This document shows positions 4,556 through 42,156 of a stretch of 64,000 bases of DNA, piece by piece. The stretch covers positions 210,459 through 274,458 of the forward strand of contig NIVC01000903.1 of NCBI GenBank assembly GCA_002269645.1, in the 5' to 3' direction. Each line of letters begins with the position of its first letter. The stretch's first letter is position 1. The notes beneath the pieces are model-generated. The model worked only from the letters and a program-made list of their open reading frames with translations, ran no database searches and was not told the origin of the DNA. The DNA comes from Macrostomum lignano (taxonomy: Eukaryota). A program made the position numbers and the translations under genes.

Positions 4556-7500
4556 CTATAGGTACCTCCGCTTCTTGAAGCCGGGCGGGGCCAGGCTAGT
4601 GTTATTGTTGTTATTGACGCCCAGCCGGTCCCGCAGGCCGGCCAGCTCGGCCTCATAGGCAGCCAGCATTTCCGCGCCGGCGCCTTTCATCAGCCGGACG
4701 TCGGCGTCCAGCTCCTCTAAGGCGCGGTACTCGCCGGCCAGCAGGCGGGCCCGAATCCCAGCCAGTCCGCCTGCGGTTGGGCGCCGACTGTCCGGCCAGC
4801 GGGCCAGCCGGTCCAGCAGGTCGAGAGCCGAGGCGCGCCAATCCGTCGCCGACGCCGATGGTGATGATGTTGGCGCCAGTATCATTGTTGACGACGCGTT
4901 GCTCGAGGCCGAGCTGGCGGCAGCGAGAGTCAGAGCCATCGACATTGAGATTGACGAGACCGGCCCGGCCATATGCGGCGGCTGAGGCGCCTGCGGCTGC
5001 TGAGGCGGCGGCATCGGCGGTTGCTCCTCGTCGAGATCAACGCCGTGCACGGGTAGCGACGGGGCAGCGGCGGCGGCAACGGAGGTGTTGGTCTGCGTTC
5101 TGGCAGTGGGCGCTGTAGCGAACAGCAGCTGATGGTGCTGCTGATGAAGCTGCGGCTGCTGGCCTGGGCTGGCCACAATCTTTGAGGCGCCTGACATTGC
5201 CGGCTTTTGAACTACAATCACCGGCTTGCCGAAGCCTGATGTGTTCGGCCGGCTGATGACTCGGACAGTTTGCTGCTGCTGTTGCTGTTGGGTGTGATGA
5301 AGCAACGGCTGCTGCTGATGCTGCTGTTGCTGGGCGTGATGAAGCACCGACTGCTGCTGCTGATGCTGCTGTTGCTGGGCGTGATGAAGCACCGGCTGCT
5401 GCTGATGCTGCTGTTGCTGGCTGTGATGAAGTACCGACTGCTGCTGCTGATGCTGCTGTTGCTGGGTGTGATGAAGCACCGACTGCTGCTGATGCTGGAT
5501 TCCGCGCCCAGTATCGGCTGTATGCGGTGGTCCGGCGACAATATAGATTGGAGTCTGAACTGACTCAGATGTCTGCACTAGCACGGGCGGCCGGGTAGGG
5601 GTCGACAAGGCCTGATGCTGCTGCTGAGGCTGCTGAGGCTGCAAAGGCGGCACCTGAGCAGCTTGCGGCTGCGGCTGAGACGGCGGCGGCAGGGCCGACA
5701 CGGCAACATTGGCCAGCGTCACCAAGTCCTCAGCGATGGCTGCCGCGGTGGCTTGCGCCAGAGGATCGTCGTTAGACTCGCAAGCTGGAGCGGCGGCTGG
5801 AGCTGCAGAGTCAGGCATTTCTGCATCCTTCTGATCGTCTTCAGCCTGCTGCTGCGAAGTGGAGGCCAGCAGCTGGCGCCGGAACTCCTCTGCGGCGGCT
5901 AGGAGCTCCTCCTGTCGTTGCGTGGCCCGAGACAGCAGCTGTTGATTGGGCTTACTGGGCAGGGCGGCGGCCGCGGGAGTCTTGGATGCCCGGCCGGCCG
6001 CAGGGGGCTTCACCTTGGCCCGGTCCGGCTCTCGCTGCTGCTGCTCTTTCAGCATCGCAGCTGGCGGCGCCTCCGTTTCGCTTCCGTTAGCCGTCTGCTG
6101 CTTGCGGCGCAGTTCAACCGCCACAGCGTCGGCCCGCCTGCCAGCCTCGGTAAGCGCGGCTGCGTCGTTCGCCCAGTCCAGGGCGGGCACCACGCAGCGG
6201 CCTTCTTCGCGCCAGTCGCCGCCGGTGTCCCGGCCGAACACCTGGGATGTCAGGTGCATAGGGGGATATGGGTTTTAGATGGCTCTCAAAATGACGAGAT
6301 GTCGAGATACAGGTCGCCAAAAAGTCGTCTAAGAGTCAAATTGAGGCGCTTATTGTCTGCGACTCTGAAACGCTGCACCCCCAGATACCACTCGGGAGGT
6401 CGCTCCATACTCCAAGTATACTCCCATGGGAGGTGGCTGCACCCTCAGATACCCCCGGGAGGTCGCTCCATACTCCAAGTATACTCCCATACTCCCATGG
6501 GAGGTCGCTGCACCCTCAGATACCCCCGGGAGGTCGTTCCATACTCCAAGTATACTCCCATACTCCCATGGGAGGTCGCTGCACCCTCAGATACCCCCGG
6601 GAGGTCGCTCCATACTCCAAGTATACTCCCATACTCCCATGGGAGGTCGCTGCACCCTCAGATACCCCGGGAGGTCGCTCCATACTCCAAGTATACTCCC
6701 ATACTCCCATGGGAGGTCGCTGCACCCTCAGATACCCCCGGGAGGTCGCTCCATACTCCAAGTATACTCCCATACTCCCATGGGAGGTCGCTGCACCCTC
6801 AGATACCCCCGGGAGGTCGCTCCATACTCCAAGTATACTCCCATACTCCCATGGGAGGTCGCTGCACCCTCAGATACCCCCGTGAGGTCGCTCCATACTC
6901 CAAGTATACTCCCATACTCCCATGGGAGGTCGCTGCACCCTCAGATACCCCCGGGAGGTCGTTCCATACTCCAAGTATACTCCCATACTCCCATGGGAGG
7001 TCGCTGCACCCTCAGATACCCCCGGGAGGTCGCTCCATACTCCAAGTATACTCCCATACTCCCATGGGAGGTCGCTGCACCCTCAGATACCCCCGGGAGG
7101 TCGCTCTATACTCCAAGTATACTCCCATACTCCCATGGGAGGTCGCTGCACCCTCAGATACCCCCGGGAGGTCGCTCCATACTCCAAGTATACTCCCATA
7201 CTCCCATGGGAGGTCGCTGCACCCTCAGATACCCCCGGGAGGTCGCTCCATACTCAGATACCCCCGGGAGGTCGCTCCATACTCAGATACCCCTTGGGAG
7301 CTCGCTGCACCCTCAGATACCCCGGGAGGTCGCTCCATACCCAGATACCCCTCGGGAGGTCGCTGCACCCTCAGATACCCCGGGAGGTCGCTCCATACTC
7401 AGATACCCCTTGGGAGCTCGCTGCACCCTCAGATACCCCCGAGAGGTCGCTATACCCCAGAAGCCTTTCAGAAACCACTGTAATAAAACTCTTGTAAATC

Positions 7501-7981
7501 CTATTGATAGGCTGCCCTAGGAGTGTATCATAAATTGCATTTGTCTGATAAGCCACTGCAATCCGAACAAATACAACTCAGCAATACCAACATACCCAGT
7601 CAGCAATACCAACATACCCAGTCAGCAATACCAACATACCCAGTCAGCAATACCAACATACCCAGTCAGCAATACCAACAGACCCAGTCAGCAATACCAA
7701 CATACCCAGTCAGCAATGGCAGACAATTCCTCGTCAAGTGCAGCCCGGCGGCACTCGCAGCGATGTCGGGTCTCCGAGACGCCCAGGGCGGCGCGCAATC
7801 CGCGCAACAAGTCGCGCTTAGCCTCAGTGAGGGCGCCCTGGGCGCGCATTACAGACACGGCGTCGCCATATAGGCGAAGCTCCTTCCTACGCAGCAGGCC
7901 GAGGCACTCCTCCCTAGTCAGGTCCAGCAGGGAGGGGCCGCTGCTCCCACTGCCGCAGGCTTTCAGTGCGTTGTTCAGCAT
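4556..7981 (-). CDS. EMSY: EMSY-like ENT-domain transcriptional regulator, ~653 aa, 2 coding exons
   Basis: Exon 1 is 7981(or 8008)-7706 and exon 2 is 6241-4556, joined by a phase-0 GT..AG intron. The spliced sequence SLLDLTREECLGLLRRKELRLYGDAVSVMRAQGALTEAKRDLLRGLRAALGVSETRHRCECRRAALDEELSAIADW|VFGRDTGGDWREEGRCVVP matches the EMSY ENT domain and its following W..EGR..VP motif. Then Q/P/A-rich low complexity and C-terminal KKRR. Confidence 0.85.
5270..5490 (-). repeat. Coding poly-Q/His minisatellite in EMSY exon 2
   Basis: About 6 units of 36-39 bp encoding QQQ(Q)(S/P)VLHH(T/S/A)QQQQH. Confidence 0.85.
6370..7455. repeat. 70-71-bp tandem array filling the EMSY intron
   Basis: Unit GGGAGGTCGCTGCACCCTCAGATACCCC(C)GGGAGGTCGCTCCATACTCCAAGTATACTCCCATACTCCCAT; breaks into shorter subunits after ~7250. 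Confidence 0.95.
7579..7717. repeat. 22-bp tandem array straddling the EMSY exon 1 splice donor
   Basis: Six copies of CAGCAATACCAACATACCCAGT. On the - strand each copy is 12 nt of exon end plus the GTATGT donor. Confidence 0.9.
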
Positions 7982-10254
7982 TGATAATATAATCTGTTGG
8001 ATCAGCATTTTGTGGGCTTATAATAATAAAGTTATTTTTTTCATATTTTTCACTTGATAATTGTCAATTTCACATAGAGCTTTTTGTTTACTTTTTAACT
8101 TAACTAGTCAAAGAATTTTTATTGCAATAATAAATGCAACACTATAGTGAAAAGGCAATATTTAGTAGGGTATCTTACTTTTTAATATTTAAAATAAACT
8201 TCACTAGGTTTTAATAGCATTATATATATATTTTACTGCAAATTGATTTTTTTTACATGGGCCTATACTACAAGCTATATGATATATATAGATATCATTA
8301 TATTTTTTTATCTATCAGTGTTAAATGTACAAATCAATGACAATTAACTAAATGATAGGCTGATGGTTTATGTAGAAAAATTTTTTTCATTATATTTTAC
8401 TCTTTTACTTTGTTCTTTAGATATATCCATATCGGAGTCTAGTTTTACTACCTTACAAATAAAGAAATAACAAAATTCATTTTGACACTTGTCAAATTAG
8501 ATCTAAGTCTAAAAATTAGTCTAGATTTGTCTATTTATCATTTTTATAGCAAATAAAGCTAGATAAAGACAATTCATATTTAATATATAGGAAGGAAACA
8601 ATACATATAAATAGGTCCCAAGATGGCACGGTATAGCAAATTAATAAATAATAGGCAATTATTGGCCTTTTTTAGTTTTTTTCAATATATTGAATCACTT
8701 TGACAAGGTTTGTCTTTTTGACAAATCATCGAATAGCTAGCTACAATATGGCTTATAATATGGGTACAATATAGATATCTAAATTGTAGCCAATGACCAT
8801 TATTGCAGATAGGGTCTAGTGTGAATTGGTCCTTGGTAGTGCAATAGGGATAGATATTGCTACTTTGTAGAGATAGATATTGCTAGATATTGCTATCCAT
8901 ATGACATATAGCAATTTTTGATATGCATCTATATAATAGCATAGAAAATGTTTATCCATTAGAAGTCTTTTTTACTCTATCTATAACCTTTTGACATAGC
9001 CTTTATGCTAGGCTTTAATAGGCCAATGCATTTGCATATTTATAAAATTTATTCTAATAAGGGACTATGTCTATAGAGATAAGCTAGGCATATAAAATAT
9101 CTTTTTTTAATTATACTTTCTATAAATGCTAAGAAAAGATACCTTATCTAATCTATATTAGATTTTTATATATGTATACTAAAAAATTATCTTATATACT
9201 AAAATATGGCTTATTTAATAAAAAGTATAAAATAGATACCTTGTTTTGCACTGTCTAGGACTAGGCCTTTGTTATGGATTGCACTTATTGTCTAGACAAA
9301 AACTCAGATTTGTCACCATTGTCAGACCTATGCTATAATATAGTATCCAATTAGCAATCTCAATCTTGAAAAAAATTCCCAATCCTTATCTTGCCTAATG
9401 ATTTCAATCCTGTCCAACCTCTAATGTCAACCCAAACTTTCTCTACTACTACTGCTGCCTGGTCCCTTAAAAAAGGATCAAGATGCTAATACAGGCCTTT
9501 GAGAAGCTATAATGCTATAACACTTAGAGGCAATTATAAAAAAGCTACACAATAAGCTAGCTAATGGATTCTATGGACCATGTATTCTTAAAACTTAGCT
9601 TAGGCCTAGGCCAATTACAAAAGGGACCATTTAACAGATAGCAGAACTTGGCTATCTTCTAGAGTTTAGTTTTATATATTTAATAATTTAAAAAAAATAA
9701 TGATTTCCTTAGTAACTACAATTACTTGTAAACATTCATTGGTTTAGACTTGGTAGTTTGTCAATTTATGTTTATATCTATTAGTTTGAGATGGCTATTG
9801 GCTATGTCTATGGCCAAAACCTGCAACCACTCCCTGTTTTTTGAAAAGGACTTAGGGTAGGAGGGACTGGGATTCTGAGAGATTTCTTACCTTGCTTGCT
9901 TTTTTGTCAATATTGAGCAACAATTCTTTTTCTAATCTAAGCAATCATGGCTAGATATCCTATAGCACCTACTTTGATAATTCCTATTGCCACACATAAT
10001 GTATATCCTATGGGCTATGGCAGACCTTTGCAACTTCAACCCTATACTGCACAAATTGAATACAAGCCAAGGCCCTGTTTGACACCTACCTTAACAAATT
10101 TCTGTGGTATCATTACTATCTACCCAATATGTTTGAGCTTTGGCAACATCCTATTCTAGGTGGCACATTACTAAAATGTCTAAAACTTTTCATTTAGTAG
10201 TTTAACAAACTGTCTATTGTTTTCCAATGTTATAACTTAATTAAAAGTTTTTAA

Positions 10255-11555
10255 AAAAATTAAGGGAGTGCTTATCCCCACGGTCCCATGCCAATAATTC
10301 CAATTTTATCTACATGGATCTATGTAGATAATTTCTAGCTTATCCTCATGGCAGTTTATTGAAATAGCTACCACCATTCAAGTTTATAGGCCATGTCAAT
10401 AATTCTAATTTTATTCACACAGATCCATGTTGATAATTTTTAGCTTATCCCTATGGCAGCTTATTGGAATAGAGAATCTTAAAATAAATCTACTCAAAAA
10501 CTGTCTATTTGTTTACTGTTTTACAAATCTTCCAAATAAACTAAAGTATTGAATACTAAACAGTATTGAGTGACTTTGCTAAAACTTTTTTGGCATTAAA
10601 GGGTTAGTTTTAAATATTTGACTAGCTGCCAGCTTTGCTTAGAAATGATGAACAACCCTAAGATCAAGGTGAATAAGACTTGCAAAATTCAAAAGTCAAT
10701 ATGTAATAATAATGATAATAATACTAATTATAATGACAATATTGATTAAAAGTCAGTAACAAAACTAGACACAAGCGACTTCACAATCTTAGCTGTAGGG
10801 ATAAGCTGAAAATTATTGACACATCCATATGGATAAAATTGGAATTATTGACATAGCCTATAGACTTGAATGGTGGAAGCTATTTCAATAAGCTGCCATG
10901 GAGATAAGTTGGAAATTATCAACATGGACCTGTATGGATAAAAGGTATTGTCCACTTTGGTAATAGCCATTTTGGTAATAGCCACTTTAGTAACAACAAC
11001 AAATGAGAATAATATAATACATTAATTGATATGCTCCAAAAGAATGTGCGAACAAACTTTAAGAAAGAAGGACAAAATACATGCGTACCTGCATGTGTTT
11101 AACTTGTTTTAAAGTGTTTTAACCAATTTATTTTAATTTCCAGATGAGTTAGATTACATGCATTTTGTAATTGACCAAACTTTGTGTACCATTTACATTG
11201 GAATCTCTGATACTAGTTAGCGAATAGTGACTTAAAATTATAGAATCTATTTTTTTTCTTCATTAATTATTTAGATTTTTTCGACTTCAATGTGTGTATG
11301 GGAGCTTGCTTTGCTAAATTTAACAGTTTAACTAGAAAGTTTAATGATATGTGCAATAAGATATTTGAGATGTTAATTATTAAACTAATTATTTCTAAAC
11401 CTTATTATCATAAAAATAAAGTGTTGACAGTCATAAATCTGCTTTGTTAGGCCTACTAAAATGGCTGTTACCAAAGTGGATTGTATTAGGATAAAATTGG
11501 AATTATTGGCATAGGACCATGGGGATAGGCCTAAGCACTTCCAATAATTAAATGT
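10255..11555. mobile_element. Long inverted-repeat (foldback/MITE-like) element with interrupted right arm
   Basis: Arm ~10260-10460 is the reverse complement of ~10790-10945 plus ~11488-11550. Confidence 0.6.
10951..11480. mobile_element. Nested MITE
   Basis: TIR TCCACTTTGGTAATAGCCAT / ATGGCTGTTACCAAAGTGGA (1 mismatch), inserted in the right arm of the element above. Confidence 0.6.
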
Positions 11556-12471
11556 GCAAAACTAGAAGATAGCCTAGAGGATAAATAAATTTATTTTTGG
11601 TTAAAGTGGTCTGTCACCATAGAAAAGGCCTGATGCCCTGAAACCCTGACAATGACAAATATGGCCTAGGCCTAACAATAACCAGTTAAGCCTAAATAAA
11701 ACATTTTGTATAAAACTTTAAAAACTATGTCTTTCGTTTTTAAGTTTTTATTCTTGTCTGTCTTTCTGCCGATAGGGTTGAACTTGAATCTTGGAAGTTA
11801 GTTCAACTAGGCCTAATGGCAATGCATTTAGGCCTACCTCAGATTTGAACTTTGACGTTCAGCAAAAGCCTTAAAGATATTTCGCACAAATAGCGTGGGC
11901 ATAATCTATATATAACGTAGAACATTTAGAAAAGAGAATCAATATCTTTTGTTATCTATTTGGGACTAGTCTAAGCTACCTAATACCTACGTCGTATGAC
12001 TTAGTATAGATATAAGAGTAAAGGCAAGGGCAAGTGCCGAGCTGCAAAAACGAAAGAGAAAGCTGTATTAGAATTATATTTACAGCACTTGACTGATGCC
12101 TGTTGTGATGAAGAATAATTTTTAAACGCTACAACTCGATAATTTTTATACAAATTTTGAATCCCTTAAAAACAATAAATTGGTCTTTATTTTCTGGAAA
12201 TTGAATCTTTGTTAAAATTTGCTAAAAGTTATTCGCCTTAACAAAGTAAAGTAAATGATTGTCCTTCTATAGAAAAATTAACTGGAAATGTTATTATGGA
12301 TGTGATTATAACTTTTTATAAGCTAATAACAATTTATACTGATTTTTCTCTTTGGCTCTATTGACTCTTACAATTTTGACCCCAGTTTAATTTGACAATA
12401 TAAAGTTGAAATATTAGGCACGCTGGCCCAGCATTCGTTCGGGCCTCATTTCGCCTTAAATGGATTTAGTG

Positions 12472-12625
12472 CAGTGGCGCAGCCGAGGACAAAGGGGCAC
12501 AGTTGCCCGCTGCCCTTCAAAATTAAAATTTTTTATCTTTACGTACTTTTAACACTTTTCCGTGCAATTTTTCTAATTATTCTTATTATATGCAGAACCA
12601 CGAGAAAATATTTACTGCGCCAGTG
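12472..12625. mobile_element. Small MITE-like remnant
   Basis: CAGTGGCGCAG ... CTGCGCCAGTG imperfect TIR (1 mismatch); no TSD seen. Confidence 0.35.
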
Positions 12626-13337
12626 AATAAATTAGTTTTAGTTTTAGTTGATTAGTTTTAAAATCTGTTTGATAAGTGAAATACATACATTTTTAAATTC
12701 CTGTGTTTATATACATCCTTTCATTCATTATGACGTAAATTATATTTTATTTCCAAGTAAAATGAGTTTCTACCTTACTCTTTCTACACACCGCTACACA
12801 TGATGCCGCTGCTATTTATGTCAGTAATTTCCTTAGTGAAGCAAAACAGCGTTTTATAATCGATATGTATATTTTTTGTTTACCTTATGATTTATTTAGG
12901 TTAACTTAACTACCATTAAATGGCATAATCCTTGAACTAGGACCTTTGCTAGATAACTATAACAATGTGTTTTTCGTCATATTTGATAAATTGGGTGTAT
13001 TAGAGCCCATGCAGTTTAGTTTGTAAATTAGACATTAAAACTATGTGTAAAAACTATGCAACTTGTGACTTTGACACCAATTCAAGTTCTGCCAATTTTA
13101 GTACTACCCGGTAGAGTTATGAATTTTAACAAAATGAAATATTTAAATGACATCAGCTTCTTCCCTACTGTGAATCTATGCACTGTATATTTTCTTTATG
13201 CAATAATATTTTATTCATATTATAGAAAAACCCACCACAAGTAAATATTTATAATACACTCTTCTACATTTACCACAATTTTATCATATAAACCAAATCA
13301 TACCATCCTGCTGGGTTAAATTATTTTTTCTGGCTCA

Positions 13338-16300
13338 ATGCTAGATGGCGGGGATATTAAAGCTGATGCTGGGAGCATACCCAGCATAACAGTGAGCAAT
13401 CCGGTGCTGCAGTCCGAGGCTGTCAACGCCGCAGCTTCTCGAACTCCGTTCCGATGGGAGGAGACCAGGCTGCCGCACATTGACTACGTGCTGGTCTACA
13501 AACGCGACGGAAATGAAAGAAACGAAAAACTCAGAGAAGCCTTTCTGGACGTGCTGAAAATCAAGCGGCCCGGCATCGACACGGAGGAATTTGAATATGA
13601 CGGGGAATTCGGGCAAAGTCTGGTTTTTCTTAAAGTCTACACACCTTTTCACGTTTTGGCCAAGGAAGCGGAACGATTAAAACTGGAGATGGCTCTCGAC
13701 AAGGTAAGTTTTTTCAATATTTTATTTGTTTTTTTTAACTTTATTGTAATTAAAAGTAACTGTTACAATTTTTAAGACGTGTTAATACATATGCAAGCAG
13801 GAGTCTCCAGCTGCCACTGTACTGTCTGACGAGGAAGAGGAAACTCAGTTCATCCGCTGGGTAGGCAGGCCCAGGCTTAGTAGAGAGCTGTCAATTCTGC
13901 TAGACGGAATTTATTAGTTTGACTAATTAGCCAATCATGCTTCGTTTCAGCACAGTAGAATACACAGGGCGCCAAGAGTTCCTCTCTGTGTCAGTGGGGC
14001 CAGTTTGTGTGTCAGGAGTTCCGCTCTGCGTCAGTGGGGCCAGTTAGTGTGTCAGGAGTTCCGCTCTGTGTCAGTGAGGCCAGTTTGTGTGTCAGGAGTT
14101 CCGCTCTGTGTCAGTGGGGCCAGTTTGTGTGTCAGGAGTTCCGCTCTGTGTCAGTGGGGCCAGTTTGTGTGTCAGGAGTTCCTCTCTGTGTCAGTGAGGC
14201 CAGTTTGTGTCAGTAGTTCCTCTCTGTGTCAGTGAGGCCAGTTTGTGTGTCAGGAGTTCCTCTCTGTGTCAGTGAGGCCAGTTTGTGTCAGTAGTTCCTC
14301 TCTGTGTCAGTGAGGCCAGTTTGTGTGTCAGGAGTTCCTCTCTGTGTCAGTGAGGCCAGTTTGTGTCAGTAGTTCCTCTCTGTGTCAGTGAGGCCAGTTT
14401 GTGTGTCAGGAGTTCCTCTCTGTGTCAGTGAGGCCAGTTTGTGTGTCAGGAGTTCCTCTCTGTGTCAGTGAGGCCAGTTTGTGTGTCAGGAGTTCCGCTC
14501 TGTGTCAGTGGGGCCAGTTTGTGTGTCAGGAGTTCCTCTCTGTGTCAGTGGGACCAATTTGTGTGTCAGGAGTTCCTCTCTGTGTCAGTGGGGCCAGTTT
14601 GTGTGTCAGGAGTTCCTCTCTGTGTCAGCGGGACCAGTTTGTGTGTCAAAAGCTCCTCTCTGTGTCAGTGAGGCCAGTTTGTGTGTCAGGAGTTCCTCTC
14701 TGTGTCAGTGAGGCCAGTTTGTGTGTCAGGAGTTCCTCTCTGTGTCAGTGAGGCCAATTTGTGTCAGAAGCTGAGCTTTAAGCATCAAGGATGTCAATTT
14801 TTGTTGTCACTGGAAACAGAAGTCTCATCAGTCGTAATACAGTATTTATATTTTGTACCATCCTCCAGTCACTCTCCAGTACTCTGTACGCACAGAACGT
14901 ACCTTCTTTTAAATTATCGCGCGTCTATTTTTGTTTAATATTGTGTGCCTTTTCTTTCAAAATCTCTCTGAACAGTCGATTTCACCGTTGGAGAGTTTCA
15001 ATCTTTCTAAGAAAATCGGCCAGTGCCTGGGCCTTATCGAGGACGATGAACGTGAGTTCAGGAGTTTGCAGATAGAGTTTTTGCACGAGATTGATTCAAT
15101 AAATTGAAAACTCAAAACTAATTATTCATAGCGGACTACATCAGCGGGCCATTCACGCGAAATCGGCTGCACCTGTTCAAGGGACACGAGAACACTGAGA
15201 CGTTCTTCCGGCCGGCTCTGAGATCGTACTTGGTGAGCTGGACTTCATTTCAGCTACTTGTAATATCCTGCTTTTAATACTCGCGACATCGAAGCTAAGA
15301 TAGATTGGTCTCTTGCAGACCTACAATATCCTGATCAACGCTGATATTGGCTCCAATGTGCCGGATGTGGATAAAGACGTTTCTAAGACTGGTGAGTTCA
15401 ATATCAAAGCATGTAGATCAAAGCACAGCGGGAGATGGCGGCACATTAAAGTACAACAGGGGATGGCGGCACATCAAAGCACAGAAGGGGATGGCGGCAC
15501 ATCAAAGCACAGCAGGGGATGGCGGCACATCAAAGCACAGCAGGGGATGGCGGCACATCAAAGCACAGCAGGGGATGGCGGCACATCAAAGCACAGCAGG
15601 GGATGGCGGCACATCAAAGCACAGCAGGGGATGGCGGCACATCAAAGCACAGCAGGGGATGGCGGCACATCAAAGCACAGCAGGGGATGGCGGCACATCA
15701 AAGCACAACAGGGGATGGCGGCACATCAAAGCACAGCAGGGGATGGCGGCACATCAAAGTACAACAGGGGATGGCGGCACATCAAAGCACAGCAGGGGAT
15801 GGCGGCACATCAAAGCACAACAGGGGATGGCGGCACATCAAAGCACAACAGGGGATGGCGGCACATCAAAGCACAGCAGGGGATGGCGGCACATCAAAGC
15901 ACAGCAGGGGATGGCGGCACATCAAAGCACAGCAGGGGATGGCGGCACATCAAAGCACAACAGGGGATGGCGGCACATCAAAGTACAACAGGGGATGGCG
16001 GCACATCAAAGCACAGCAGGGGATGGCGGCACATCAAAGCACAACAGGGGATGGCGGCACATCAAAGCACAACAGGGGATGGCGGCACATCAAAGCACAG
16101 CAGGGGATGGCGGCACATCAAAGCACAGCAGGGGATGGCGGCATATCAAAGCACAGCAGGGGATGGCGGCACATCAAAGCACAGCAGGGGATGGCGGCAC
16201 ATCAAAGCACAACAGGGGATGGCGGCACATCAAAGCACAGCAGGGGATGGCGGCACATCAAAGTACAACAGGGGATGGCGGCACATCAAAGCACAGCAGG

Positions 16301-19300
16301 GGATGGCGGCACATCAAAGCACAACAGGGGATCGGATGGCGGCACATCAAAGCACAACAGGGGATCGGATGGCGGCACATCAAAGCACAACAGGGGATCG
16401 GATGGCGGCACATCAAAGCACAACAGGGGATCGGATGGCGGCACATCAAAGCACAACAGGGGATCGGATGGCGGCACATCAAAGCACAACAGGGGATCGG
16501 ATGGCGGCACATCAAAGCACAACAGGGGATCGGATGGCGGCACATTAAAGCACAACAGGGGATCGGATGGCGGCACATCAAAGTGCAACCCTTGGTGGTA
16601 CATCAAAGTGCAACCCTTGGTGGTACATCAAAGTGCGAGGTAATCTTCTACCAAAGTCATCCGCCCTCTCTCCCGTCGCTACGGCAACGCAGCCCTGCCA
16701 AAGCTGTTGCACCGGGGCGCCTTCATAGACGCGTTCATTCTGCACGACCCGTCAGCCGACGACCCCTGGGTCTCCAGTCTCAAAGCCGCTTGGTTCAAGC
16801 GCCATCCGGACGACTTAGAAACATCAACGGCTAATCTGCCGAATCTAACAACGTTAAGGCGAGCCTCAACCCCGGTTGCCAGGCTGTTGAAATCAGTTCG
16901 GCGAATCGGCGAGTGCCGGTTCGATTACAGCTACGAGCCTGACGAGCGCAGACGACTCGGCCAGGTATGGAGCAGCCTGGTGAAGTACCAGCCATTGGAC
17001 AGGGTGCGGAACTACTTTGGAGAAAAGGTCGCCTTCTATTTTGCCTGGTCGGGTCACATGATCAGCATGCTGTGGGCTCCCATGCTGATTGGTCTGGCAA
17101 TCTTTTTGTACGGGCTGGCGCTCAGGTAAGCTGAATCTTGTTGACACCTGGAATGTAGGGTCACGATCGAATAGTGCCAAATACCTAAGCCGTTTAATAT
17201 TTTATAAAATATTAAATTTTCAGTATCGAAAGGCACATAATCAACGGTGGGACGTCTCCAGCCTCAAAGAATAGAACTGCTGATGCAGTTGAACAGTAAG
17301 TTAGTTCCATTTCCCAGGCCTGTGCACGGCTTGTAAAGTGCTGGCACTGTTGGGGTCGCACTGCCACTCAATCGCAGCGGAAGTGAACCCTAACCGCCTC
17401 TAACCCAACCGAGACACATTGAGACTAGCAAATGTAATAAAACCACGGCAACCAGTCTAGCGAGGGTAATAAACCCGCACACAGGGAGACTAGCAAATGT
17501 AATAAAACCACGGCAACCAGTCTAGCGAGGGTAATAAACCCCCACACAGGGAGACTAGCAAATGTAATAAAACCACGGCAACCAGTCTAGCGAGGGTAAT
17601 AAACCCGCACACAGGGAGACTAGCAAATGTAATAAAACCACGGCAACCAGTCTAGCGAGGGTAATAAACCCCCACACAGGGAGACTAGCAAATGTAATAA
17701 AACCACGGCAACCAGTCTAGCGAGGGTAATAAACCCGCACACAGGGAGACTAGCAAATGTAATAAAACCACGGCAACCAGTCTAGCGAGGGTAATAAACC
17801 CCACACAGGGAGACTAGCAAATGTAATAAAACCACGGCAACCAGTCTAGCGAGGGTAATAAACCCCACACAGTGAGACTAGCAAATGTAATAAAACCATG
17901 GCAACCAGTCTAGCGAGGGTAATAAACCCCACACAGTGAGACTAGCAAATGTAATAAAACCATGGCAATCAGTCTAGCGAGGGTAATAAACCCCCACACA
18001 GGGAGACTAGCAAATGTAATAAAACCACGGCAACCAGTCTAGCGAGGGTAATAAACCAGACACAGGGAGACTAGCAAATGTAATAAAACCACGGCAACCA
18101 GTCCAGCGAGGGTAATAAACCCCACACAGTGAGACTAGCAAATGTAATAAAACCATGGCAATCAGTCTAGCGAGGGTAATAAACCCCCACACAGGGAGAC
18201 TAGCAAATGTAATAAAACCACGGCAACCAGTCTAGCGAGGGTAATAAACCAGACACAGGGAGACTAGCAAATGTAATAAAACCAGGACAATCAGTCCAGC
18301 GAGGGTAATAAACCAGACACAGTGAGACTAGCAAATGTAATAAAACCAGGACAACCAGTCTAGCGAGGGTAATAAACCCGCCATTGCAAAACCGCCACTC
18401 ACCTTATATCCTGAAATCGCAGAATGATGGCCCTAGTAGACGACATGCTTGCCACAGTGAAAGAGGCATTCGACAACCTGTTAACTCCCATATTTGCCAT
18501 CATTATCTGCCTGTGGGGCACTCTGCACACGGAGATGTGGAAGCGCTACAGAGCCACCCTGGCCTACGAATGGGACGTGAACAATTATAAGCACGCCGAG
18601 CCTGACAGGCCGGAGTTTGTTGGAACCATGGAGAGACCGGTAATTCTGTCGTTTCACACTTGATCTCAATTCTAATTGAGTAGTGTTCGCCAATATATAT
18701 TAAACTCATGGCAAAATGATCTTCGCAGGATCCAATTACTGGCAAGAGCGACTCCTACTACCCTGGCCACTATCAAGCCATGAAATTTGTCACCTCATTT
18801 ATCATCCTGCTGCTGATGGTGCGTTCGCTTGCTTTGAAACAGTGTAGCTCTAATCATAGCTCTAGTTTCAATTGGTAGCTATAGTAGTGGCTCTAGTAAA
18901 AGCTCTAGTAGTGGTTCTAGCAGAAGCTCTAGTAGTTGGTTGCCCTAGTAGTGCCTGTAGTAGTGGCTCTAGTAGTAGCTCCAGTAGTGCCTGTAGTAGT
19001 GGCTCTAGTAGTAGCTCTATTAGTGCCTGTAGTAGTGGCTCTAGTAGTAGCTCGAGTAGTGCCTGTAGTAGTGGCTCTAGTAGTAGCTCTAGTAGTGCCT
19101 GTAGTAGTGGCTCTAGTAGTAGCTCTATTAGTGCCTGTAGTAGTGGCTCTAGTAGAAGCTCTAGTAGTGGCTCTAGTAGTGGCTCTAGTAGTGGCTCTAG
19201 GCCCCAATAATAGCTCTAGATTATGGTAGCGGCTCTTCACAACGCAGCCAATGCCGGATGCAGACTAGAGTGCACCCCTTCCACCCGCTGCAGATCTGCG

Positions 19301-22300
19301 TAGTGTTCATCGGCGTTGCCGCAGTTATCGTCTATAGAATCTTTGTGACCATTCGCGTCTGCCCGAACGTCACCAGCTCCAGCTGCCTGCTACTGAATGC
19401 AGTCGTCAGCTCCCTGCTAAACGCCGTCTTCATTATCGTGATCGGAAAGGTGGGCGCCTTGGTAACTGAGCTGAATTCGGATTTGCTTAATACATTAATC
19501 CGTGTGCATTGGCTAGATTAGCAATCCATTCTATTCCTTAATTCTGAAGTCCGGACTAGTCTTAATCAATCAATTCCCACCGTATTTACAAGGCAGAGCC
19601 CATCCGAACAAAAGTGCAAATACGTGGGCCATAATGACTTCCACACAGAACTAAATGCCATCAGCTCACAGTCCCTATTCAGATTGACTGTCAAAGCTCT
19701 CTGTAATCATTCTTATCCCCTCACCCGATTATTACCTTTGCAGGTGTACAACAATATTGCGTACGCCTTAACTAACTGGGGTAAGTGGGGCGAATGTTTG
19801 CTCAGGGAAGAATTCCCAACCTGCGCAGTGCAGGTGCAGGCAAGCATTCAGTCAGTTAATTTCCACCAGCTGACTCAGATTATTGCCAATGCCCGCAGAG
19901 AACCACCGCACGCAGAGCGACTATGACAATGCCCTCATTCTGAAGCTGTTCGCCTTTGAGTTTGCCAACTCCTACAGTTCGCTGTTCTACATTGCCTTCT
20001 TTAGAGACGTAAGAAGACTTTAGAAATCGATCGATGGAGGTTGAGTCAATATTAAAAATACAAAATGCCTATTTTTAAAGCCGTTTTATATGAAGTATCA
20101 TCGCCAGTAGCTTTGCTTTTTGCTCAAGACAATGTACAGTTGGTTCAGACCCATTTTAAAACTGATTTAACCAGGGGCAGAGCAAAAACGGCTCTGATTC
20201 AGGCACCACAAAACCTCTGGTTCGTTTCCATGTGCGGCCACTTTCATTTGGCCTGTGAGTTGTCTTTGCATTTCACATCCGTGAAGACCAACCCCCAAGG
20301 CACAGAGACTGTACATGCCATGTACATAAACAACGGGGGTTGTAGCCTAGTGTTCAGAGCGTCGGACTCACGACTGGAAGGTCGGGGGTTCGATTCTCGA
20401 CCCACTTGGAACAATTTGTGTCCTTAAGCAAGTCACTTAACTCTGCATTGCTTCAGTTCACCCAGCTGTAAAATGGGTGCCAGCATTAGCTGGGGTAATT
20501 TGAGGGTGTGTGTGGCGACCCCCCAGTCCTTGGACTGAACAGCCGTACGCAGCCTTCAGATGCGCAGCGCAATAGCTGCGGCTGAGCTGTCGGTTGCACA
20601 TCTGCCCATTGGGGCTGGTGTAATCACATTATTATTTTTTATAATTTTAAGTGCATATTGCAATCGCTAATCCAAGCACAGTTTTCAGCCCCTACCCGCC
20701 GCCTGATCCTTGCAGAAGAACATGTTCACACCGGAGAACGGCATCTTCAATTTGGGCAAAGAGTTTGTTGACACCTGCGGCTCCGACGGCAACTGCATGT
20801 CGATGCTGTCTCTGCAGGTGCTCATCCTGATGATTGCCAAGCCGATGCCGAAACTGTTCACGGATCACGGGCTGCCGTGAGTGCAGAAGGGATATAGTGC
20901 TGTTTCTTTGAAAATACATGTATAGAGTTCTTTTCTATAGGCAATTAGTTCTTAGAAATAATCTTAGAAATCTTTTTCTTATAAATCTTAGAAAATTTAC
21001 ATTGTTACATTTACTGTGTAACACTGTTTCTTGAAAAATTTACCATTGGTTCTTGGAAAGTGTAGCACTGTTTATCAGGAAGTATTATGCGGTTTCTTGG
21101 AACGTATAAGACTGTTTCTTGGGAAATTTATCATTGTTTCTTGCACTGTTTCTCAGGAAATATTATGCGGTTTCTTGGAACGTATAACACCGTTTCTTGG
21201 AAAATTTACCTGTCTTTCTTTGTAAGTCGATCACTGTTACTCAGGAAGTAATATGTGGTTTCTTGGAAAGTAAAACATTGTTTCTTTGTTCTGAAACTTT
21301 CTAATTGTTTCTTGGAAAATGTAGCACTATTTCTCAGGAAATATTATGCGGTTTCTTGGAAAGTATAACACTGTTTCTTGGAAATATTAGCTATGTTTCT
21401 TGGAAAACGTGTAGCACTGGTTTTAAGGAAGTATTATGCGGTTTCTTGGAAAGTGCAGTCCTTATTTCTTGCAAAGGGTAGTGCCATTTCTTGGAAAGTC
21501 GACAAGGGCCAGGCTTTTCTGCTAATTCTACGTAGTATTCGCGTATAAATCTCCAAAACTAAAAATTTTTTTTCGATATTACGATATTATGACAGACAGC
21601 TCTGAGCGCTACCCGAGCAGCCACAGTCCGGACACCTGTCCATCTCAGGTCAGGTCAGGCTCAGGTCTCATCTCAGGACACCTGTCCATCTCAGGTCAGG
21701 TCAGGCTCAGGTCTCATCTCAGGACACCTGTCCATCTCAGGTCAGGTCAGGCTCAGGTCTCATCTCAGGACACCTGTCCAGCACTGAAAATAAGAAACCA
21801 ATTATAATTGAAATGAAATAAAATGCAGCTCAAAGTCCAAACTATAGAGGGAAGAGAGGGACTGAGGACAGGGAGAGGTTTGAAGGGCTGCGTCTCCATG
21901 ACAACGAGTGAGACAAAGTTATGAGTATTTGCCAAAGCAAAGGCATACAGATGAGAGTTAAAAGGATTGAAGGATTTTCGATTAAACAATTTGCAATCCC
22001 GTGCAGTGCAGAATATGCCAGTGTTCAATGCTCCATCGCTAGCACTGCTAGTGCATATTTGTGTGACTCTTGCCTTAGTTAAAATCTGCCAGCTTGGAGA
22101 CTGCAACATCCATAGAAACTCACTGCATTACCCCTTTGATGGGGAAGTCGAAGTGGGAAAATGGCCTGGGATTTGGCCCTCGCTCAGGTGGGGAACTGTT
22201 TGCCCCTGATGCGGGTTAGTTGACAGAGTGATTCCTGTCGTGTGCACCTCAACAAGGCTCCGCTACTCGTACCTCTGTCCTGTGCAGTTCTCGGTCTGGT

Positions 22301-25300
22301 GTACTTTTTTTCTGAGCCGCTCTGGCTTATCACTTTCTGGCTAAATACCCAAAAAACTCCTGCGACATCTCAATTTTAAAAGTACAAGCGTAGTTGGACT
22401 CACGAATCGTTCAAATTTTAGTTTTTGTACTGCAAAATTCATTGGCGATAGATGGAGAGTTTTCTAGGGATCCACTAGAAGTTATCTACATATTTAAAGC
22501 TATGCTTTTATATTTAAACCTTGTAATGATTTACCAGACCAGGATTTCTAACTAATTTAATGATACAGACACATCGGTAACTTCTAGTGGTCCTTGTATC
22601 TCACATTCTGGACTTCTGAATTCTAAATAAAGCAAACATGTTTCGTTCGAGATGCGCTCACAAGTTTGTAAGACAGTCATAGACGGGGGGAGCATCACAA
22701 ACCCGAAATATCACAAACCCGAAATATCACAAACCCGAAATATCACAAACCCGAAATATCATAACTCCGAAAGTTCTAGCAATGTCCAACGCTATGTTGG
22801 TTTTCGGAGTTATGATATTTCGGGTTTGTGATATTTCGGGATTGGGATATTTCGGGTTTGTGATATTTCGGGTTTGTGATATTTCGGGTTTGTGATATTT
22901 CGGGTTTGTGATATTTCGGGTTTGTAATACTTCGGGTTTGTGATATTTCGGGTTTGTGATATTTCGGGTTTGTGATATTTCGGGTTTGTGATATTTCGGG
23001 TTTGTAATACTTCGGGTTTGTGATATTTTGGGTTTGTGATATTTCGGGTTTGTAATACTTCGGGTTTGTGATCTTTCGGGTTTGTGATCTTTCGGGTTTG
23101 TGATCTTTCGGGTTTGTGATCTTTCGGGTTTGTGATCTTTCGGGTTTGTGATATTTCGGGTTTGTGATATTTCGGGTTTGTGATCTTTCGGGTTTGTGAT
23201 CTTTCGGGTTTGTGATATTTTGGGTTTATTATGGGAAGTGATTTCGGAGTTGCGATTTTTCTGGTTTATGATGGCGACCCCCATGGACTACTAAGTCACT
23301 GACGCGTTCGCCCCATTTGGCCCATGACTGCAATTTCAATATAGAGAGCGAGTGTAAAGTCTCAATAAACATAAATTCCTACGTCATTTATATTCGCATA
23401 TTTTAATTATGACAAAAGTAACTGTTTCTGCTTCTGTTCTGAAACAAGGCTGTGTTATACTGTTGGCTTTGCAAAAAAAGACTCGAGTGTGGCGGCACGC
23501 GCGTGAGAATTCTGCAAGGGATTGGGATTCTGGCATAGCAACAAGCTGCAGAGCAACAGCGAACAGGTTTTGCTGCTCCTGGCTGGCGAGAACCGGTTGC
23601 CCGAGCTATTCTGAGAGCAGCTTTATCTCCTCTGTTTTCTTACTCAAGATTCTTTTGTACCTTCGGGTTTACTTGTGCATCGCTGATTGCCCGTGATGAA
23701 GCCAGTGAGGCTGTCTCTGGGCGCGACTGGGGCTGCAGAATTAATTATTGAGTATTTGAGTAAGCGAATGAGGTGAGTGAGCTTATGAGTGAGTTCATGA
23801 GTGACTTAATAAATGGGTTTATAAGCGAGTTTTATGAGTGAGTTTTATGAGTAAGTTCATGAGTTCATGAGTTCATGAGTGAGTTCATGAGTTCATGAGT
23901 GAGTTCATGAGTGAGTTCATGAGTTCATGAGTGAGTTCATGAGTTCATGAGTGAGTTCATGAGTGAGTTCATGAGTGAGTTCATGAGTGAGTTCATGAGT
24001 GAGTTCATGAGTTCATGAGTGAGTTCATGAGTGAGTTCATGAGTTCATGAGTGAGTTCATGAGTTCATGAGTGAGTTCATGAGTAAGTTCATGAGTTCAT
24101 GAGTTCATGAGTGAGTTCATGGGTTCATGAGTTCATGAGTGAGTTCATGAGTTCATGAGCTTATAAGTGAGTGAGTTCATGAGTGAGTTCATGAGTTCAT
24201 GAGTTCATGAGTGAGTTCATGAGTTCATGAGCTTATAAGTGAGTGAGTTTATGAGTGAGTTCATGAGTTCATGAGCTTATAAGTGAGTGAGTTTATGAGT
24301 GAGTTCATGAGTGAGTTTATGAGTGAGTTTATGAGTGAGTTTATGAGTGAGTTCATGAGTGAGTTCATGAGTGAGTTCATGAGTTCATGAGTTCATGAGT
24401 GAGTGAGCTCATGAGCTTATAAGTGAGTGAGTTTATGAGTGAGTTCATGAGTGAGTTCATGAGTGAGTTCATGAGTTCATGAGTTCATGAGTGAGTTCAT
24501 GAGTTCATGAGCTTATAAGTGAGTGAGTTTATGAGTGAGTTCATGAGTGAGTTTATGAGTGAGTTTATGAGTGAGTTCATGAGTGAGTTCATGAGTGAGT
24601 TCATGAGTGAGTTCATGAGTTCATGAGTTCATGAGTTCATGAGTTTATGAGTGAGTGAGCTCATGAGCTTATAAGTGAGTGAGTTTATGAGTGAGTTCAT
24701 GAGTGAGTTCATGAGTGAGTTCATGAGTTCATGAGTTCATGAGTGAGTTCATGAGTTCATGAGTTCATGAGTGAGTTCATGAGTTCATGAGTTCATGAGT
24801 TTATGAGTGAGTGAGCTCATGAGCTTAAAAGTGAGTGAGTTTATGAGCGATTTCATGAGTGAGTTTATGAGTGAGTTCATTAGTGACTTCATGAGTGAGT
24901 TCATGAGTTCATGAGTTCATGAGTGAGTTCATGAGTTCATGAGTTCATGAGTTTATGAGTGAGTGAGCTCATGAGCTTATAAGTGAGTGAGTTTATGAGC
25001 GAGTTCATGAGTGAGTTTATGAGTGAGTTCATGAGTGAGTTTATGAGTGAGTTCATTAGTGACTTCATGAGTGAGATCATGAGTGAGTTCATTAGTGAGT
25101 TCATGAGTGTGTGTCAGTAAGTTTATGAGTGAGTTTATGAGTGAGTTCATGAGTGAGTTCATGAGTTCATGCGTTTATGAGTGAGTGAGCTCATGAGCTT
25201 ATAAGTGAGTGAGTTTATTGTTGAGTTCATGAGTGAGTTCATGAGTTCATTAGTGAGTGAAAATGCAGCAACTTAATTAGAATCAAAACAGCCGCTTTCC

Positions 25301-41736: not shown

Positions 41737-41776
<40 letters not shown>

Positions 41777-41789
41777 AAGTTAGTTAGTA

Positions 41790-41820
<31 letters not shown>

Positions 41821-41921: not shown

Positions 41922-41972
<51 letters not shown>

Positions 41973-42109: not shown

Positions 42110-42156
<47 letters not shown>

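What the first reader, a model, noticed from the sequence alone, without database searches (positions are those of the whole stretch)
4600..4845. EMSY-like protein ends in a 'pocket-less' bromodomain-like helical bundle
Seen: the C-terminus reads WRASALDLLDRLARWPDS-RRPTAGG-LAGIRARLLAGEYRALEELDADVRLM-KGAGAEMLAAYEAELAGLRDRL. Established: bromodomains are aZ-ZA loop-aA-aB-BC loop(Asn)-aC bundles. From recall, the PHIP/BRWD second bromodomain has WKKQC.ELLNLIFQ.EDS and F.TVRETL.AGNY.SP.E.CKDVRLI, which align with the first and third blocks. Inference: the helices are kept, but most of the ZA loop (with its Tyr) and the BC-loop Asn that bind acetyl-lysine are gone. As far as I know vertebrate EMSY has no bromodomain, so an ENT plus non-reading bromo-fold may be an undescribed architecture used for protein-protein contact in a Sin3/KDM5-type complex.
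Basis: partly seen in the sequence, partly recalled or inferred. Interest (0 to 1): 0.72.

Follow-up and report, generated by a model that had tools for sequence, protein, structure and literature searches.

The report
Stripped-down bromodomain remnant in flatworm EMSY
The last ~80 residues of the Macrostomum lignano EMSY chromatin protein look like the shrunken remains of an acetyl-lysine-reading bromodomain that mollusc EMSY genes (and apparently the sea-urchin one) still carry intact; the reading loops are gone and only the four helices are left.

Summary
Window 4622-4840 (minus strand) ends the last exon of a transcript-supported EMSY orthologue of the flatworm Macrostomum lignano, with a clear ENT domain in exon 1.

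On its own the C-terminus fails the bromodomain test: Pfam PF00439 scores 13.5 bits against a 21.7-bit cut-off (E 0.074). Context changes the picture:
- In two mollusc EMSY loci, the same position after the same EMSY motifs encodes a canonical bromodomain (80 and 85 bits). A sea-urchin gene model that appears to continue EMSY also carries a Pfam bromodomain hit.
- The flatworm helix 1 and helices 2-3 each match the corresponding mollusc segments better than any of 100 shuffles.
- Against a general bromodomain profile, hhalign gives 76% probability and score 32.3. Shuffled and natural controls never exceed 17.
- A confident AlphaFold model (pLDDT 87) has four helices. Its top 50 PDB neighbours are all bromodomains, though weakly (TM 0.4-0.5).

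About 27 ZA-loop residues (including the Tyr) and about 14 BC-loop residues (including the Asn) are missing.

ENT plus bromodomain, however, is probably an ancestral invertebrate EMSY architecture, and the flatworm form is a degenerate derivative. Its function is untested.

The parts
7706..8008 (-). Exon 1 of the EMSY orthologue (ATG at 8008; ends ...IADW|GTATGT). Encodes the ENT domain.
   Evidence: Pfam ENT 50.1 bits, E 2.8e-13. Human EMSY 1utu E 1e-21. Splice site read and checked.
6242..7705 (-). Intron (GTATGT...TCCCAG), filled with minisatellites (71/58/88-nt units at 6418-7451; 22-nt unit at 7578-7717).
   Evidence: The same junction is used in GenBank models P0001/P0007/P0008.
4556..6241 (-). 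Exon 2 (last exon, includes stop TAG 4556-4558). Contains the post-ENT EW..EGR motif, a disordered Q/H-rich middle with the EMSY motifs GKPVIVVQK and VDLD, then the C-terminal module.
   Evidence: The motifs are colinear with mollusc and urchin EMSY loci.
5271..5497 (-). Coding 42/87-nt tandem repeat (QQQQHQQQ.SVLHH units). Copy number differs between paralogues.
   Evidence: TRF. Indels at protein positions 385-399 among four copies.
4805..4840 (-). Helix 1 (WRASALDLLDRL), the aZ equivalent.
   Evidence: AF2 helix 3-14. Alone it matches the aZ columns of the mollusc EMSY bromodomain: hhalign 17.9 against 100 shuffles with mean 9.0 and max 16.6.
4775..4804 (-). Short connector ARWPDSRRPT, replacing the ~35-residue ZA region. 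About 27 residues are missing relative to Lottia, including the 'AWF..PVD' shelf and the PDYY Tyr.
   Evidence: hhalign alignments. AF2 loop 15-24.
4691..4774 (-). Helices 2 and 3 with the AB loop (AGGLAGIRARLLAGEYRALEELDADVRL), the aA-AB loop-aB equivalent. Keeps the AB-loop Tyr and the aB Asp.
   Evidence: Pfam Bromodomain local hit on profile positions 39-64. hhalign against 20 bromodomains scores 32-33, P 2.3e-5 to 4.8e-7. Controls reach at most 17.
4676..4690 (-). Five-residue turn MKGAG, replacing the end of aB plus the BC loop. About 14 residues are missing, including the acetyl-lysine-binding Asn.
4622..4675 (-). Helix 4 (AEMLAAYEAELAGLRDRL), the aC equivalent by position only.
   Evidence: AF2 helix 58-75. 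No significant sequence signal: 13/100 and 95/100 shuffles score at least as high.
4559..4621 (-). Predicted disordered tail GVNNNNNTSLAPPGFKKRRYL with a basic KKRR patch.
   Evidence: pLDDT below 50 in the 114-aa model.

Best explanation
The segment is the vestige of a bromodomain that belonged to ancestral invertebrate EMSY.

EMSY in molluscs, and apparently in a sea urchin, is built as ENT domain, long disordered middle, then a canonical C-terminal bromodomain. In Macrostomum lignano the same position holds an ~80-residue module that keeps helix aZ, helix aA, the AB loop with its structural Tyr, the first three turns of aB (DADVRLM) and a fourth helix.

Two internal deletions removed about 27 residues of the ZA loop (WPF shelf, PV, PDYY Tyr) and about 14 residues of the aB end and BC loop (the Asn that hydrogen-bonds acetyl-lysine). 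These two loops form the acetyl-lysine pocket at one end of the bundle. Without them the module should fold as a plain, compact up-down four-helix bundle (shown only by prediction) that cannot read acetyl-lysine in the canonical way (inference).

What it still does is inferred, not shown. It is most likely a structural or protein-contact element of the EMSY/KDM5/SIN3-HDAC-type complex, or a neutral relic.
For: 1. Positional orthology.
- Lottia L001 and the ENA mollusc contig L002 carry, downstream of the ENT exons on the same strand, the EMSY motifs NVVVLP, VKIT.SK, KPNVIVVQK and IDLD in order, and then four AG/GT-bounded exons. Three of these have identical sizes in the two species.
- Those exons encode Pfam bromodomains at 79.7 and 85.1 bits, against a cut-off of 21.7.
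- The Diadema gene model whose range includes KITFSK and KTNVIVVQK has a precomputed Pfam Bromodomain hit.
- The M. lignano protein has KPVIVVQK, then VDLD, then this module, in the same order.

2. Sequence signal.
- Pfam's best and nearly only hit is Bromodomain.
- hhalign against 20 bromodomains gives probability 76-92%, P 2e-5 to 5e-7, score 32-33. 300 shuffles reach at most 16.6 and 270 natural helical windows at most 17.0. That profile is valid: it retrieves 435 PDB bromodomain sequences.
- aZ alone and aA-aB alone each beat 100/100 shuffles against the mollusc EMSY bromodomain and land on the colinear columns.

3. Structure.
- AF2 on the 77 aa gives pLDDT 86.9, pTM 0.73 and four helices.
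- All top-50 Foldseek PDB hits are bromodomains, although bromodomains are only about 0.25% of distinct PDB sequences.

4. Expression.
- The gene models are transcript-derived and end here.
Against: - No single test reaches a conventional significance threshold for the whole domain. Pfam is 13.5 bits, below 21.7, at E 0.074. The Foldseek best E is 0.3 with TM 0.41-0.48. hhalign against the two-sequence mollusc profile gives only 2% probability once the 27-residue gap is charged.
- The fourth helix shows no sequence signal.
- The AF2 model is single-sequence and may echo the aA-aB motif, so it is not independent evidence.
- No flatworm or other intermediate orthologues could be retrieved.
- That the mollusc bromodomain exons are spliced to the ENT exons is inferred from colinearity and from the Diadema model, not from transcripts.
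- The bundle's handedness could not be checked because coordinates are not returned.
Confidence: 0.72

Rival explanations
1. A lineage-specific Ala/Leu/Arg-rich helical tail unrelated to bromodomains. The 26-residue L..I...L..G.Y....E...DVRLM match and the aZ resemblance are chance or convergence.
For: - Pfam is below threshold at E 0.074.
- The exhaustive phmmer search finds only self plus repeat-protein noise.
- PDB phmmer gives BRD4 at only E 1.6.
- Foldseek E-values are at least 0.3.
- The fourth helix has no signal.
Against: - The match sits exactly where other EMSY genes have a real bromodomain.
- Two separate segments match colinearly and beat all shuffles.
- The score is about 10 sd above both shuffled and natural helical controls.
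- All top-50 structural neighbours are bromodomains.
Confidence: 0.17
2. The module is still a ligand reader (acetyl-lysine or another mark), using a non-canonical surface despite the missing loops.
For: - Atypical bromodomains without the Asn exist. For example, a Leishmania 'degenerate bromodomain' lacking Asn and Tyr is discussed in PMC9279504.
- The module is predicted to be well folded.
- It is identical in all four paralogous copies.
Against: - Both pocket-forming loops are deleted, not merely substituted. Only 1 of the 6 invariant positions of the 20-bromodomain alignment is kept.
- Identity among the paralogues is not significant: 0 of 7 substitutions fall in the last 134 aa, expected by chance with p about 0.2.
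Confidence: 0.05
3. A gene-model artefact: the real mRNA splices out of this exon (for example at AG|GTACC just before the stop) into canonical bromodomain exons lying beyond the window.
For: - A GT follows ...AAGCGGAG at 4564/4563.
- Only 4.5 kb of downstream sequence lies inside the window.
Against: - Transcript-derived GenBank models of three paralogues all end at ...KKRRYL.
- The exon already contains the aZ-, aA- and aB-like pieces in one frame.
- No bromodomain exon exists anywhere else in the 64-kb window in six frames.
Confidence: 0.04

Closest known systems
Canonical bromodomain at the 3' end of mollusc EMSY genes (Lottia gigantea KB199651.1; ENA contig ERZ21788760 ctg98599l), and by Pfam hit in a Diadema antillarum gene model
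   Same: Same gene family (ENT N-terminus, same middle motifs) and the same C-terminal position. aZ begins with W..A..LL, and aA-AB loop-aB follow the pattern I R..L..G.Y....(D/E)...D..L.
   Different: The mollusc domains pass Pfam at 80-85 bits and keep AWF..PVD, PDYY and D-N-C-x-L-Y-N-P-P. The flatworm module is about 41 residues shorter, lacks all of these and scores 13.5 bits.
Generic bromodomain fold (Pfam PF00439; e.g. BRD4 BD2, GCN5, CECR2, ZMYND11/BS69 bromo)
   Same: Four helices in the same order. The best local sequence match is to aA-aB, with BET BD2 'EYRDAQEF.ADVRLM' especially close. All top-50 Foldseek neighbours are bromodomains.
   Different: No ZA loop and no BC-loop Asn, so no acetyl-lysine pocket. 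TM is only 0.41-0.48.
Degenerate or atypical bromodomains lacking Asn/Tyr (e.g. Leishmania BDF8, PMC9279504)
   Same: A bromodomain-derived fold that has lost the two acetyl-lysine contact residues.
   Different: Those keep full-length loops with substitutions. Here the loops themselves are deleted.
Vertebrate EMSY (human Q7Z589; ENT structures 1utu, 1uz3, 2fmm)
   Same: Orthologous ENT domain and post-ENT motif.
   Different: To my knowledge it is annotated with ENT only and no bromodomain. This could not be tested here because no full-length vertebrate sequence was retrievable.
Plant EMSY-like (EML) proteins: ENT plus Agenet/Tudor reader
   Same: An ENT domain combined with a C-terminal chromatin-reader domain (from knowledge; plant ENT/Agenet proteins are discussed in PMC4634149, listed).
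   Different: A different reader fold, with independent domain accretion.
PHIP/BRWD1 second bromodomain
   Same: Shares the generic aZ and aA-aB patterns. It was one of the 20 sequences in profile A2.
   Different: No specific affinity: it is absent from the PDB phmmer hits at E up to 10. The relevant relative is the EMSY-type bromodomain.

Membership tests
EMSY (ENT-domain transcriptional regulator) | N-terminal ENT domain | tested here: met
   PF03735 at 50.1 bits against a 28.5 cut-off. Human EMSY 1utu E 1e-21 with 47% identity.
EMSY (ENT-domain transcriptional regulator) | Post-ENT 'EW.(I/E)EGRR.VP' stretch and colinear middle motifs (KP.VIVVQK, (I/V)DLD) | tested here: met
   The alignment to 2fmm extends through GDWREEGRCVVPAL. 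The motifs were found in order in M. lignano, Lottia, L002, L008 and Diadema.
Bromodomain (Pfam PF00439) | Score at or above the Pfam gathering threshold | tested here: not met
   13.5 bits against 21.7, E 0.074, covering only profile positions 39-64 of 84.
Bromodomain (Pfam PF00439) | Four helices aZ-aA-aB-aC forming a left-handed bundle | tested here: inconclusive
   AF2 gives four helices of the right order and lengths, pLDDT 86.9. All top-50 Foldseek hits are bromodomains, but TM is 0.41-0.48 and E at least 0.3. Handedness is not readable from the output.
Bromodomain (Pfam PF00439) | Long ZA loop with WPF shelf, PV and the conserved Tyr (PDYY) | tested here: not met
   Replaced by ARWPDSRRPT. 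There is a ~27-residue gap against Lottia EMSY.
Bromodomain (Pfam PF00439) | Conserved Asn at the aB/BC-loop junction that binds acetyl-lysine | tested here: not met
   DVRLM is followed directly by KGAG and then helix 4, a ~14-residue gap that covers N-C-x-x-Y-N.
Bromodomain (Pfam PF00439) | aA-AB loop-aB signature with the structural AB-loop Tyr and the aB Asp | tested here: met
   LAGIRARLLAGEYRALEELDADVRLM gives hhalign score 33.1, P 4.8e-7, probability 92%. Controls reach at most 17.
Bromodomain (Pfam PF00439) | Acetyl-lysine peptide binding | not testable with these tools
   Requires peptide array, ITC or NMR.
EMSY-type C-terminal bromodomain (descent from it) | Same position in an orthologous protein and colinear similarity of more than one helix | tested here: met
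   Position. Against the mollusc profile, aZ scores 17.9 and aA-aB 17.7, each exceeding 100/100 shuffles. aC is not significant.

The most novel reading that the evidence does not exclude
Ancestral bilaterian EMSY was an acetyl-lysine reader, built as an ENT dimerisation domain plus a C-terminal bromodomain. This would explain how the EMSY/KDM5/SIN3-HDAC module is drawn to acetylated chromatin. On this reading the reader domain has been lost repeatedly: it is absent from vertebrate EMSY annotation and apparently from an insect-like EMSY, and in Macrostomum it has been whittled down to a stable, loop-less four-helix core. That core is retained because it has a second, non-reading job, such as a docking surface within the complex. 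This job would be the conserved one, and might survive in cryptic form elsewhere.
Probability: 0.35. Interest if true: 0.65.

Novelty: new variant of a known kind. Interest (0 to 1): 0.5.

Why it matters
EMSY is studied almost entirely in vertebrates, where only the ENT domain is annotated. How the protein engages chromatin within KDM5/SIN3B-HDAC complexes there is unclear.

The finding has two consequences:
- Invertebrate EMSY genes end in a canonical bromodomain. This gives a testable hypothesis for an ancestral targeting mechanism: reading acetyl-lysine to bring in a deacetylase/demethylase.
- The flatworm version is a natural 'loop-deleted' bromodomain. It is a minimal helical core that could show what, if anything, the bromodomain scaffold does apart from binding acetyl-lysine.

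The result also flags mis-split gene models. The Lottia ENT exons are annotated as a 136-aa hypothetical protein, and the rest of the gene is uncalled.

No paper in the searchable library describes a bromodomain in animal EMSY. However, automated domain hits such as the one on the Diadema model mean the architecture is probably already visible in databases.

Tried and rejected
- Word-indexed homologue searches gave nothing useful. The C-terminus and the N-terminus found nothing. The human plus M. lignano ENT profile returned only short exon-sized ENT fragments and no full-length EMSY.
- Exhaustive phmmer of the last 100 aa over 1.84e9 representatives returned only its own cluster. Five armadillo-like or other repeat proteins at E about 2e-4 share 'LAKLARWPEGAQ'-type repeats and were judged noise.
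- PDB phmmer gave top hits in polyketide synthase KS-AT linkers ('DW..A..LL....WPDS.RP', E 0.09-1.5). These were rejected as chance: unrelated context, not significant.
- Pfam DUF7877 (E 0.12) hits the same stretch. It did not appear for the genuine mollusc bromodomains at E up to 0.01 and was not pursued.
- tblastn of the M. lignano C-terminus against the Lottia locus found nothing. The bromodomain exons appeared only when the locus was searched with a bromodomain HMM.
- The first AF2 run on 114 aa, including the disordered tails, was mediocre (pLDDT 65). Its Foldseek E-values were at least 1.1. It was superseded by the trimmed run.
- The metagenome scan with the mollusc bromodomain returned mostly BPTF-, BRPF- and GCN5-type bromodomain exons. 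Only L015 is EMSY-type, and it is partial.
- Loci from a dragonfly, a camel, another lophotrochozoan and an echinoderm-like contig did not reach the 3' end of the gene within 10 kb.
- Paralogue comparison for selective constraint was uninformative. All 7 substitutions fall in the middle, with p about 0.2 for none in the last 134 aa.
Full report
**What is there**

The window is eukaryotic DNA with GC-rich exons, AT-rich introns and many minisatellites.

The gene has two exons:
- Exon 1 at 8008-7706, ending ...SAIADW|GTATGT.
- Intron at 7705-6242.
- Exon 2 at 6241-4556, starting after TCCCAG|GTGTTC.
- The product is 662 aa.

An exhaustive phmmer search found one true relative, a 646-aa protein identical over the last 100 residues. 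Its cluster comprises Macrostomum lignano GenBank proteins PAA82606.1, PAA75102.1 and PAA75095.1, plus a UniRef 'ENT domain-containing protein'. These models use exactly the same splice junction and stop. The GenBank annotation of this genome derives from an RNA-seq-guided transcriptome (PMC5730564). The segment is therefore transcribed and coding.

**It is an EMSY orthologue**

Exon 1 hits Pfam ENT at 50.1 bits. It aligns to the human EMSY crystal-structure sequences at E 1e-21, and the alignment runs past the ENT domain through the 'EW..EGRR.VP' stretch.

**The C-terminus taken alone**

- Pfam gives Bromodomain as the top hit, but below threshold: 13.5 bits against 21.7, E 0.074. It covers only residues LAGIRARLLAGEYRALEELDADVRLM, against profile positions 39-64 (aA, AB loop, aB).
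- PDB phmmer shows BRD4 at E 1.6 on the same stretch, beneath some spurious polyketide-synthase hits.
- Searches of the large protein collections gave nothing further.

On this evidence alone the verdict would have been 'cannot tell'.

**A calibrated profile test**

I built a 20-sequence bromodomain alignment from recalled human and yeast sequences (A2). I validated it against the PDB, where it retrieves 435 distinct bromodomain sequences at E up to 1e-5.

| Test against A2 | Result |
|---|---|
| hhalign, last 100 aa | probability 76%, P 2.3e-5, score 32.3 |
| hhalign, central 28 residues alone | probability 92%, P 4.8e-7 |
| 300 composition-preserving shuffles | mean 9.9, sd 1.8, max 16.6 |
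| 270 natural 100-aa windows (unrelated helical-repeat proteins and the rest of this EMSY) | mean 10.0, max 17.0 |
| Reversed sequence | score 8.0 |

Extending the alignment places helix 1 on aZ and helix 4 on aC, colinearly. Two large gaps fall at the ZA loop and the BC loop. Taken alone against this generic profile, the flanks are weak: aZ is matched or beaten by 3/100 shuffles and aC by 13/100.

**The decisive context: other EMSY genes end in a real bromodomain**

I looked up the contigs that encode ENT fragments returned.

- **Diadema antillarum (sea urchin).** The 167-aa 'EMSY-like' model is followed on the same strand by a 963-aa model. Its range contains EMSY middle motifs (MKITFSK..., KTNVIVVQK), and its product has a precomputed Pfam Bromodomain hit.
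- **Lottia gigantea (L001) and an ENA mollusc-like contig (L002).** A bromodomain HMM search of six-frame translations found strong hits 8-9.5 kb downstream of the ENT exons on the same strand, at E 1e-11 and 1e-7.
- **The sequence between ENT and those hits.** Both mollusc loci carry, in order, the EMSY motifs SPASNVVVLPSG, SPVKIT.SK, KPNVIVVQK and IDLD.
- **Exon structure.** I reconstructed four terminal exons in each locus. All are bounded by AG/GT. Three have identical lengths (83, 80 and 165 nt) in the two species, and the reading frame stays open.
- **Pfam scores.** The products score 79.7 and 85.1 bits on Pfam Bromodomain. They keep AWF..PVD, PDYY and DNC.LYNPP.
- **A third, partial example.** An EMSY-type copy turned up in a metagenome contig (L015).

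M. lignano EMSY has GKPVIVVQK, then VDLD, then the module in question, in the same order. The flatworm module therefore sits exactly where other EMSY proteins have a canonical bromodomain.

**Direct comparison with the mollusc EMSY bromodomain (A3)**

hhalign aligns ATDWRASALDLLDRLARWPD to the mollusc aZ (..W..(S/L)A..LL..V.K(Y/F)RG). It then opens a 27-residue gap, aligns GIRARLLAGEYRALEELDADVRLMKG to TIRKKLE.G.Y....DFH.DM.LV(K/R)D, and opens a second gap of about 14 residues over N-C-x-L-Y-N-P-P.

| Segment, taken alone | Score | 100 shuffles (mean; max) | Shuffles at or above |
|---|---|---|---|
| aZ | 17.9 | 9.0; 16.6 | 0 |
| aA-aB | 17.7 | 8.1; 13.0 | 0 |
| Helix 4 | no signal | - | - |

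The aZ match is clearly better to the EMSY-type domain than to generic bromodomains (17.9 against 10.0). That is what orthology predicts. The whole-domain probability is low (2%), because the gap is charged and the two-sequence template is poorly calibrated.

**Structure**

- The first AF2 run, which included the disordered tails, was mediocre.
- The trimmed 77-aa run is confident for a single sequence: pLDDT 86.9, pTM 0.73, all five models at least 81. Its helices are at 3-14, 25-36, 42-52 and 58-75.
- In Foldseek against the PDB, every one of the top 50 hits is a bromodomain (PfGCN5, CECR2, ZMYND11/BS69, GCN5, BRD4, BPTF, PB1 and others).
- Individually those hits have weak statistics: E 0.3-1.6, probability up to 0.77, TM 0.41-0.48.
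- Bromodomains are only about 0.25% of distinct PDB sequences. The enrichment is therefore real.
- The model may be echoing the aA-aB sequence motif. TM below 0.5 is also what one expects when about 40 loop residues are missing.
- I could not check handedness.

**Interpretation**

The best explanation (confidence about 0.72) is that this is a vestigial EMSY bromodomain. It has kept its helical core and lost both pocket-forming loops by internal deletion.

Of the six positions invariant in my 20-bromodomain alignment, only the AB-loop Tyr survives. The others are the WPF Phe, the PDYY Tyr, the PMD Pro and Asp, and the Asn. The nearly invariant aB Asp is also kept.

Canonical acetyl-lysine recognition is therefore very unlikely. 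This follows from established bromodomain structure-function and was not tested here. Whether the remnant serves as a docking or structural element or is simply decaying cannot be decided. The four available paralogous copies are identical in the last 134 aa, but with only seven substitutions overall that is not significant.

**Rivals**

| Rival | Confidence | Why it ranks low |
|---|---|---|
| Chance resemblance of a lineage-specific helical tail | ~0.17 | Positional orthology, two independent colinear matches, control distributions |
| A non-canonical reader | ~0.05 | The pocket-forming loops are deleted, not merely substituted |
| A gene-model artefact | ~0.04 | Transcript-derived models end here; no other bromodomain exon in the window |

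The core inference is supported: helices kept, ZA Tyr and BC Asn gone.

The 'undescribed architecture' claim needs revision. ENT plus bromodomain appears to be a widespread, probably ancestral invertebrate EMSY architecture with an intact pocket, and the flatworm form is its degenerate variant. The PHIP/BRWD likeness is generic.

I found no paper describing a bromodomain in animal EMSY. The only ENT/bromodomain links in the literature searched are separate subunits of trypanosomatid complexes. Automated Pfam hits on gene models show that the architecture is at least implicitly present in databases. Vertebrate EMSY is, to my knowledge, annotated with ENT only. I could not test that here.

**Limits**

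- No flatworm or other bridging orthologues were obtainable.
- The profile A2 rests on recalled sequences, though it was validated.
- Linkage of the ENT and bromodomain exons in molluscs is inferred from colinearity and the Diadema model, not from cDNA.
- All structural evidence is single-sequence prediction.

Noticed in passing
window 7578-7717 (minus-strand gene): A 22-nt tandem repeat (6.4 copies, 98% identical) begins inside the last 12 nt of EMSY exon 1. It reiterates the splice donor (..GCTGACTGG|GTATGTTGGTATT..) every 22 nt into the intron. Read-through from exon 1 meets an in-frame TGA after five codons (VCWYC*), so any downstream donor copy would truncate the protein.
   Followed up: partly
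window 6418-7451, and throughout (46 TRF rows with score at least 200): The EMSY intron is almost entirely minisatellite (71-, 58- and 88-nt units). The whole 64-kb window is studded with long, high-identity tandem arrays: for example 15417-16563 (28 nt), 23774-25246 (12 nt), 30864-31880 ((TCTCC)n), 45133-46427 (16 nt), 56024-57187 (32 nt) and 62221-64000 (24 nt). These arrays generate long spurious ORFs.
   Followed up: no
window 5271-5497: A coding 42/87-nt repeat gives QQQQHQQQ(Q)SVLHH units in the disordered middle of EMSY. The four M. lignano copies differ here by whole-unit indels (protein positions 385-399).
   Followed up: partly
window ~13338-26401, plus strand: An anoctamin (TMEM16) gene neighbours EMSY head-to-head. 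Exons hit Anoct_dimer at 13338-13775 and Anoctamin at 16707-17129 and 25685-26401. Its introns are full of tandem repeats.
   Followed up: partly
window ~49900-53424, minus strand; 39643-42873, plus strand: A coronin-like gene (DUF1899 + WD40 + WD40_4). There is also a GC-rich gene with armadillo/HEAT-like helical sequence and no Pfam hit at E up to 0.001.
   Followed up: partly
L001 (Lottia gigantea KB199651.1) 10001-19935; L002 (ENA ERZ21788760 ctg98599l) 9647-18466: The Lottia EMSY gene is annotated only as a 136-aa ENT 'hypothetical protein' (LOTGIDRAFT_109747). About 9 kb of downstream EMSY exons, including a canonical bromodomain, are not in any called gene. CEP19 lies upstream on the opposite strand in both mollusc loci, indicating conserved synteny.
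   Followed up: yes
L004-L007 (Logan contigs from SRR18305976, SRR17125926, SRR35359667, SRR22879918): This is an AT-rich, insect-like EMSY: an ENT ORF of 141 aa followed by a ~500-aa Ser/Asn/Thr-rich ORF. In the apparently spliced, poly(A)-ended contigs it terminates at ...DETHRSV* with no bromodomain. This suggests independent loss in that lineage. The species is not identified.
   Followed up: partly
L003 (Diadema antillarum JBFRCO010000955.1) 10001-23895: EMSY seems to be split into two gene models: 167 aa with ENT, and 963 aa with the EMSY middle motifs plus a Pfam Bromodomain hit. The bromodomain exons lie beyond the fetched locus and were not seen directly.
   Followed up: partly
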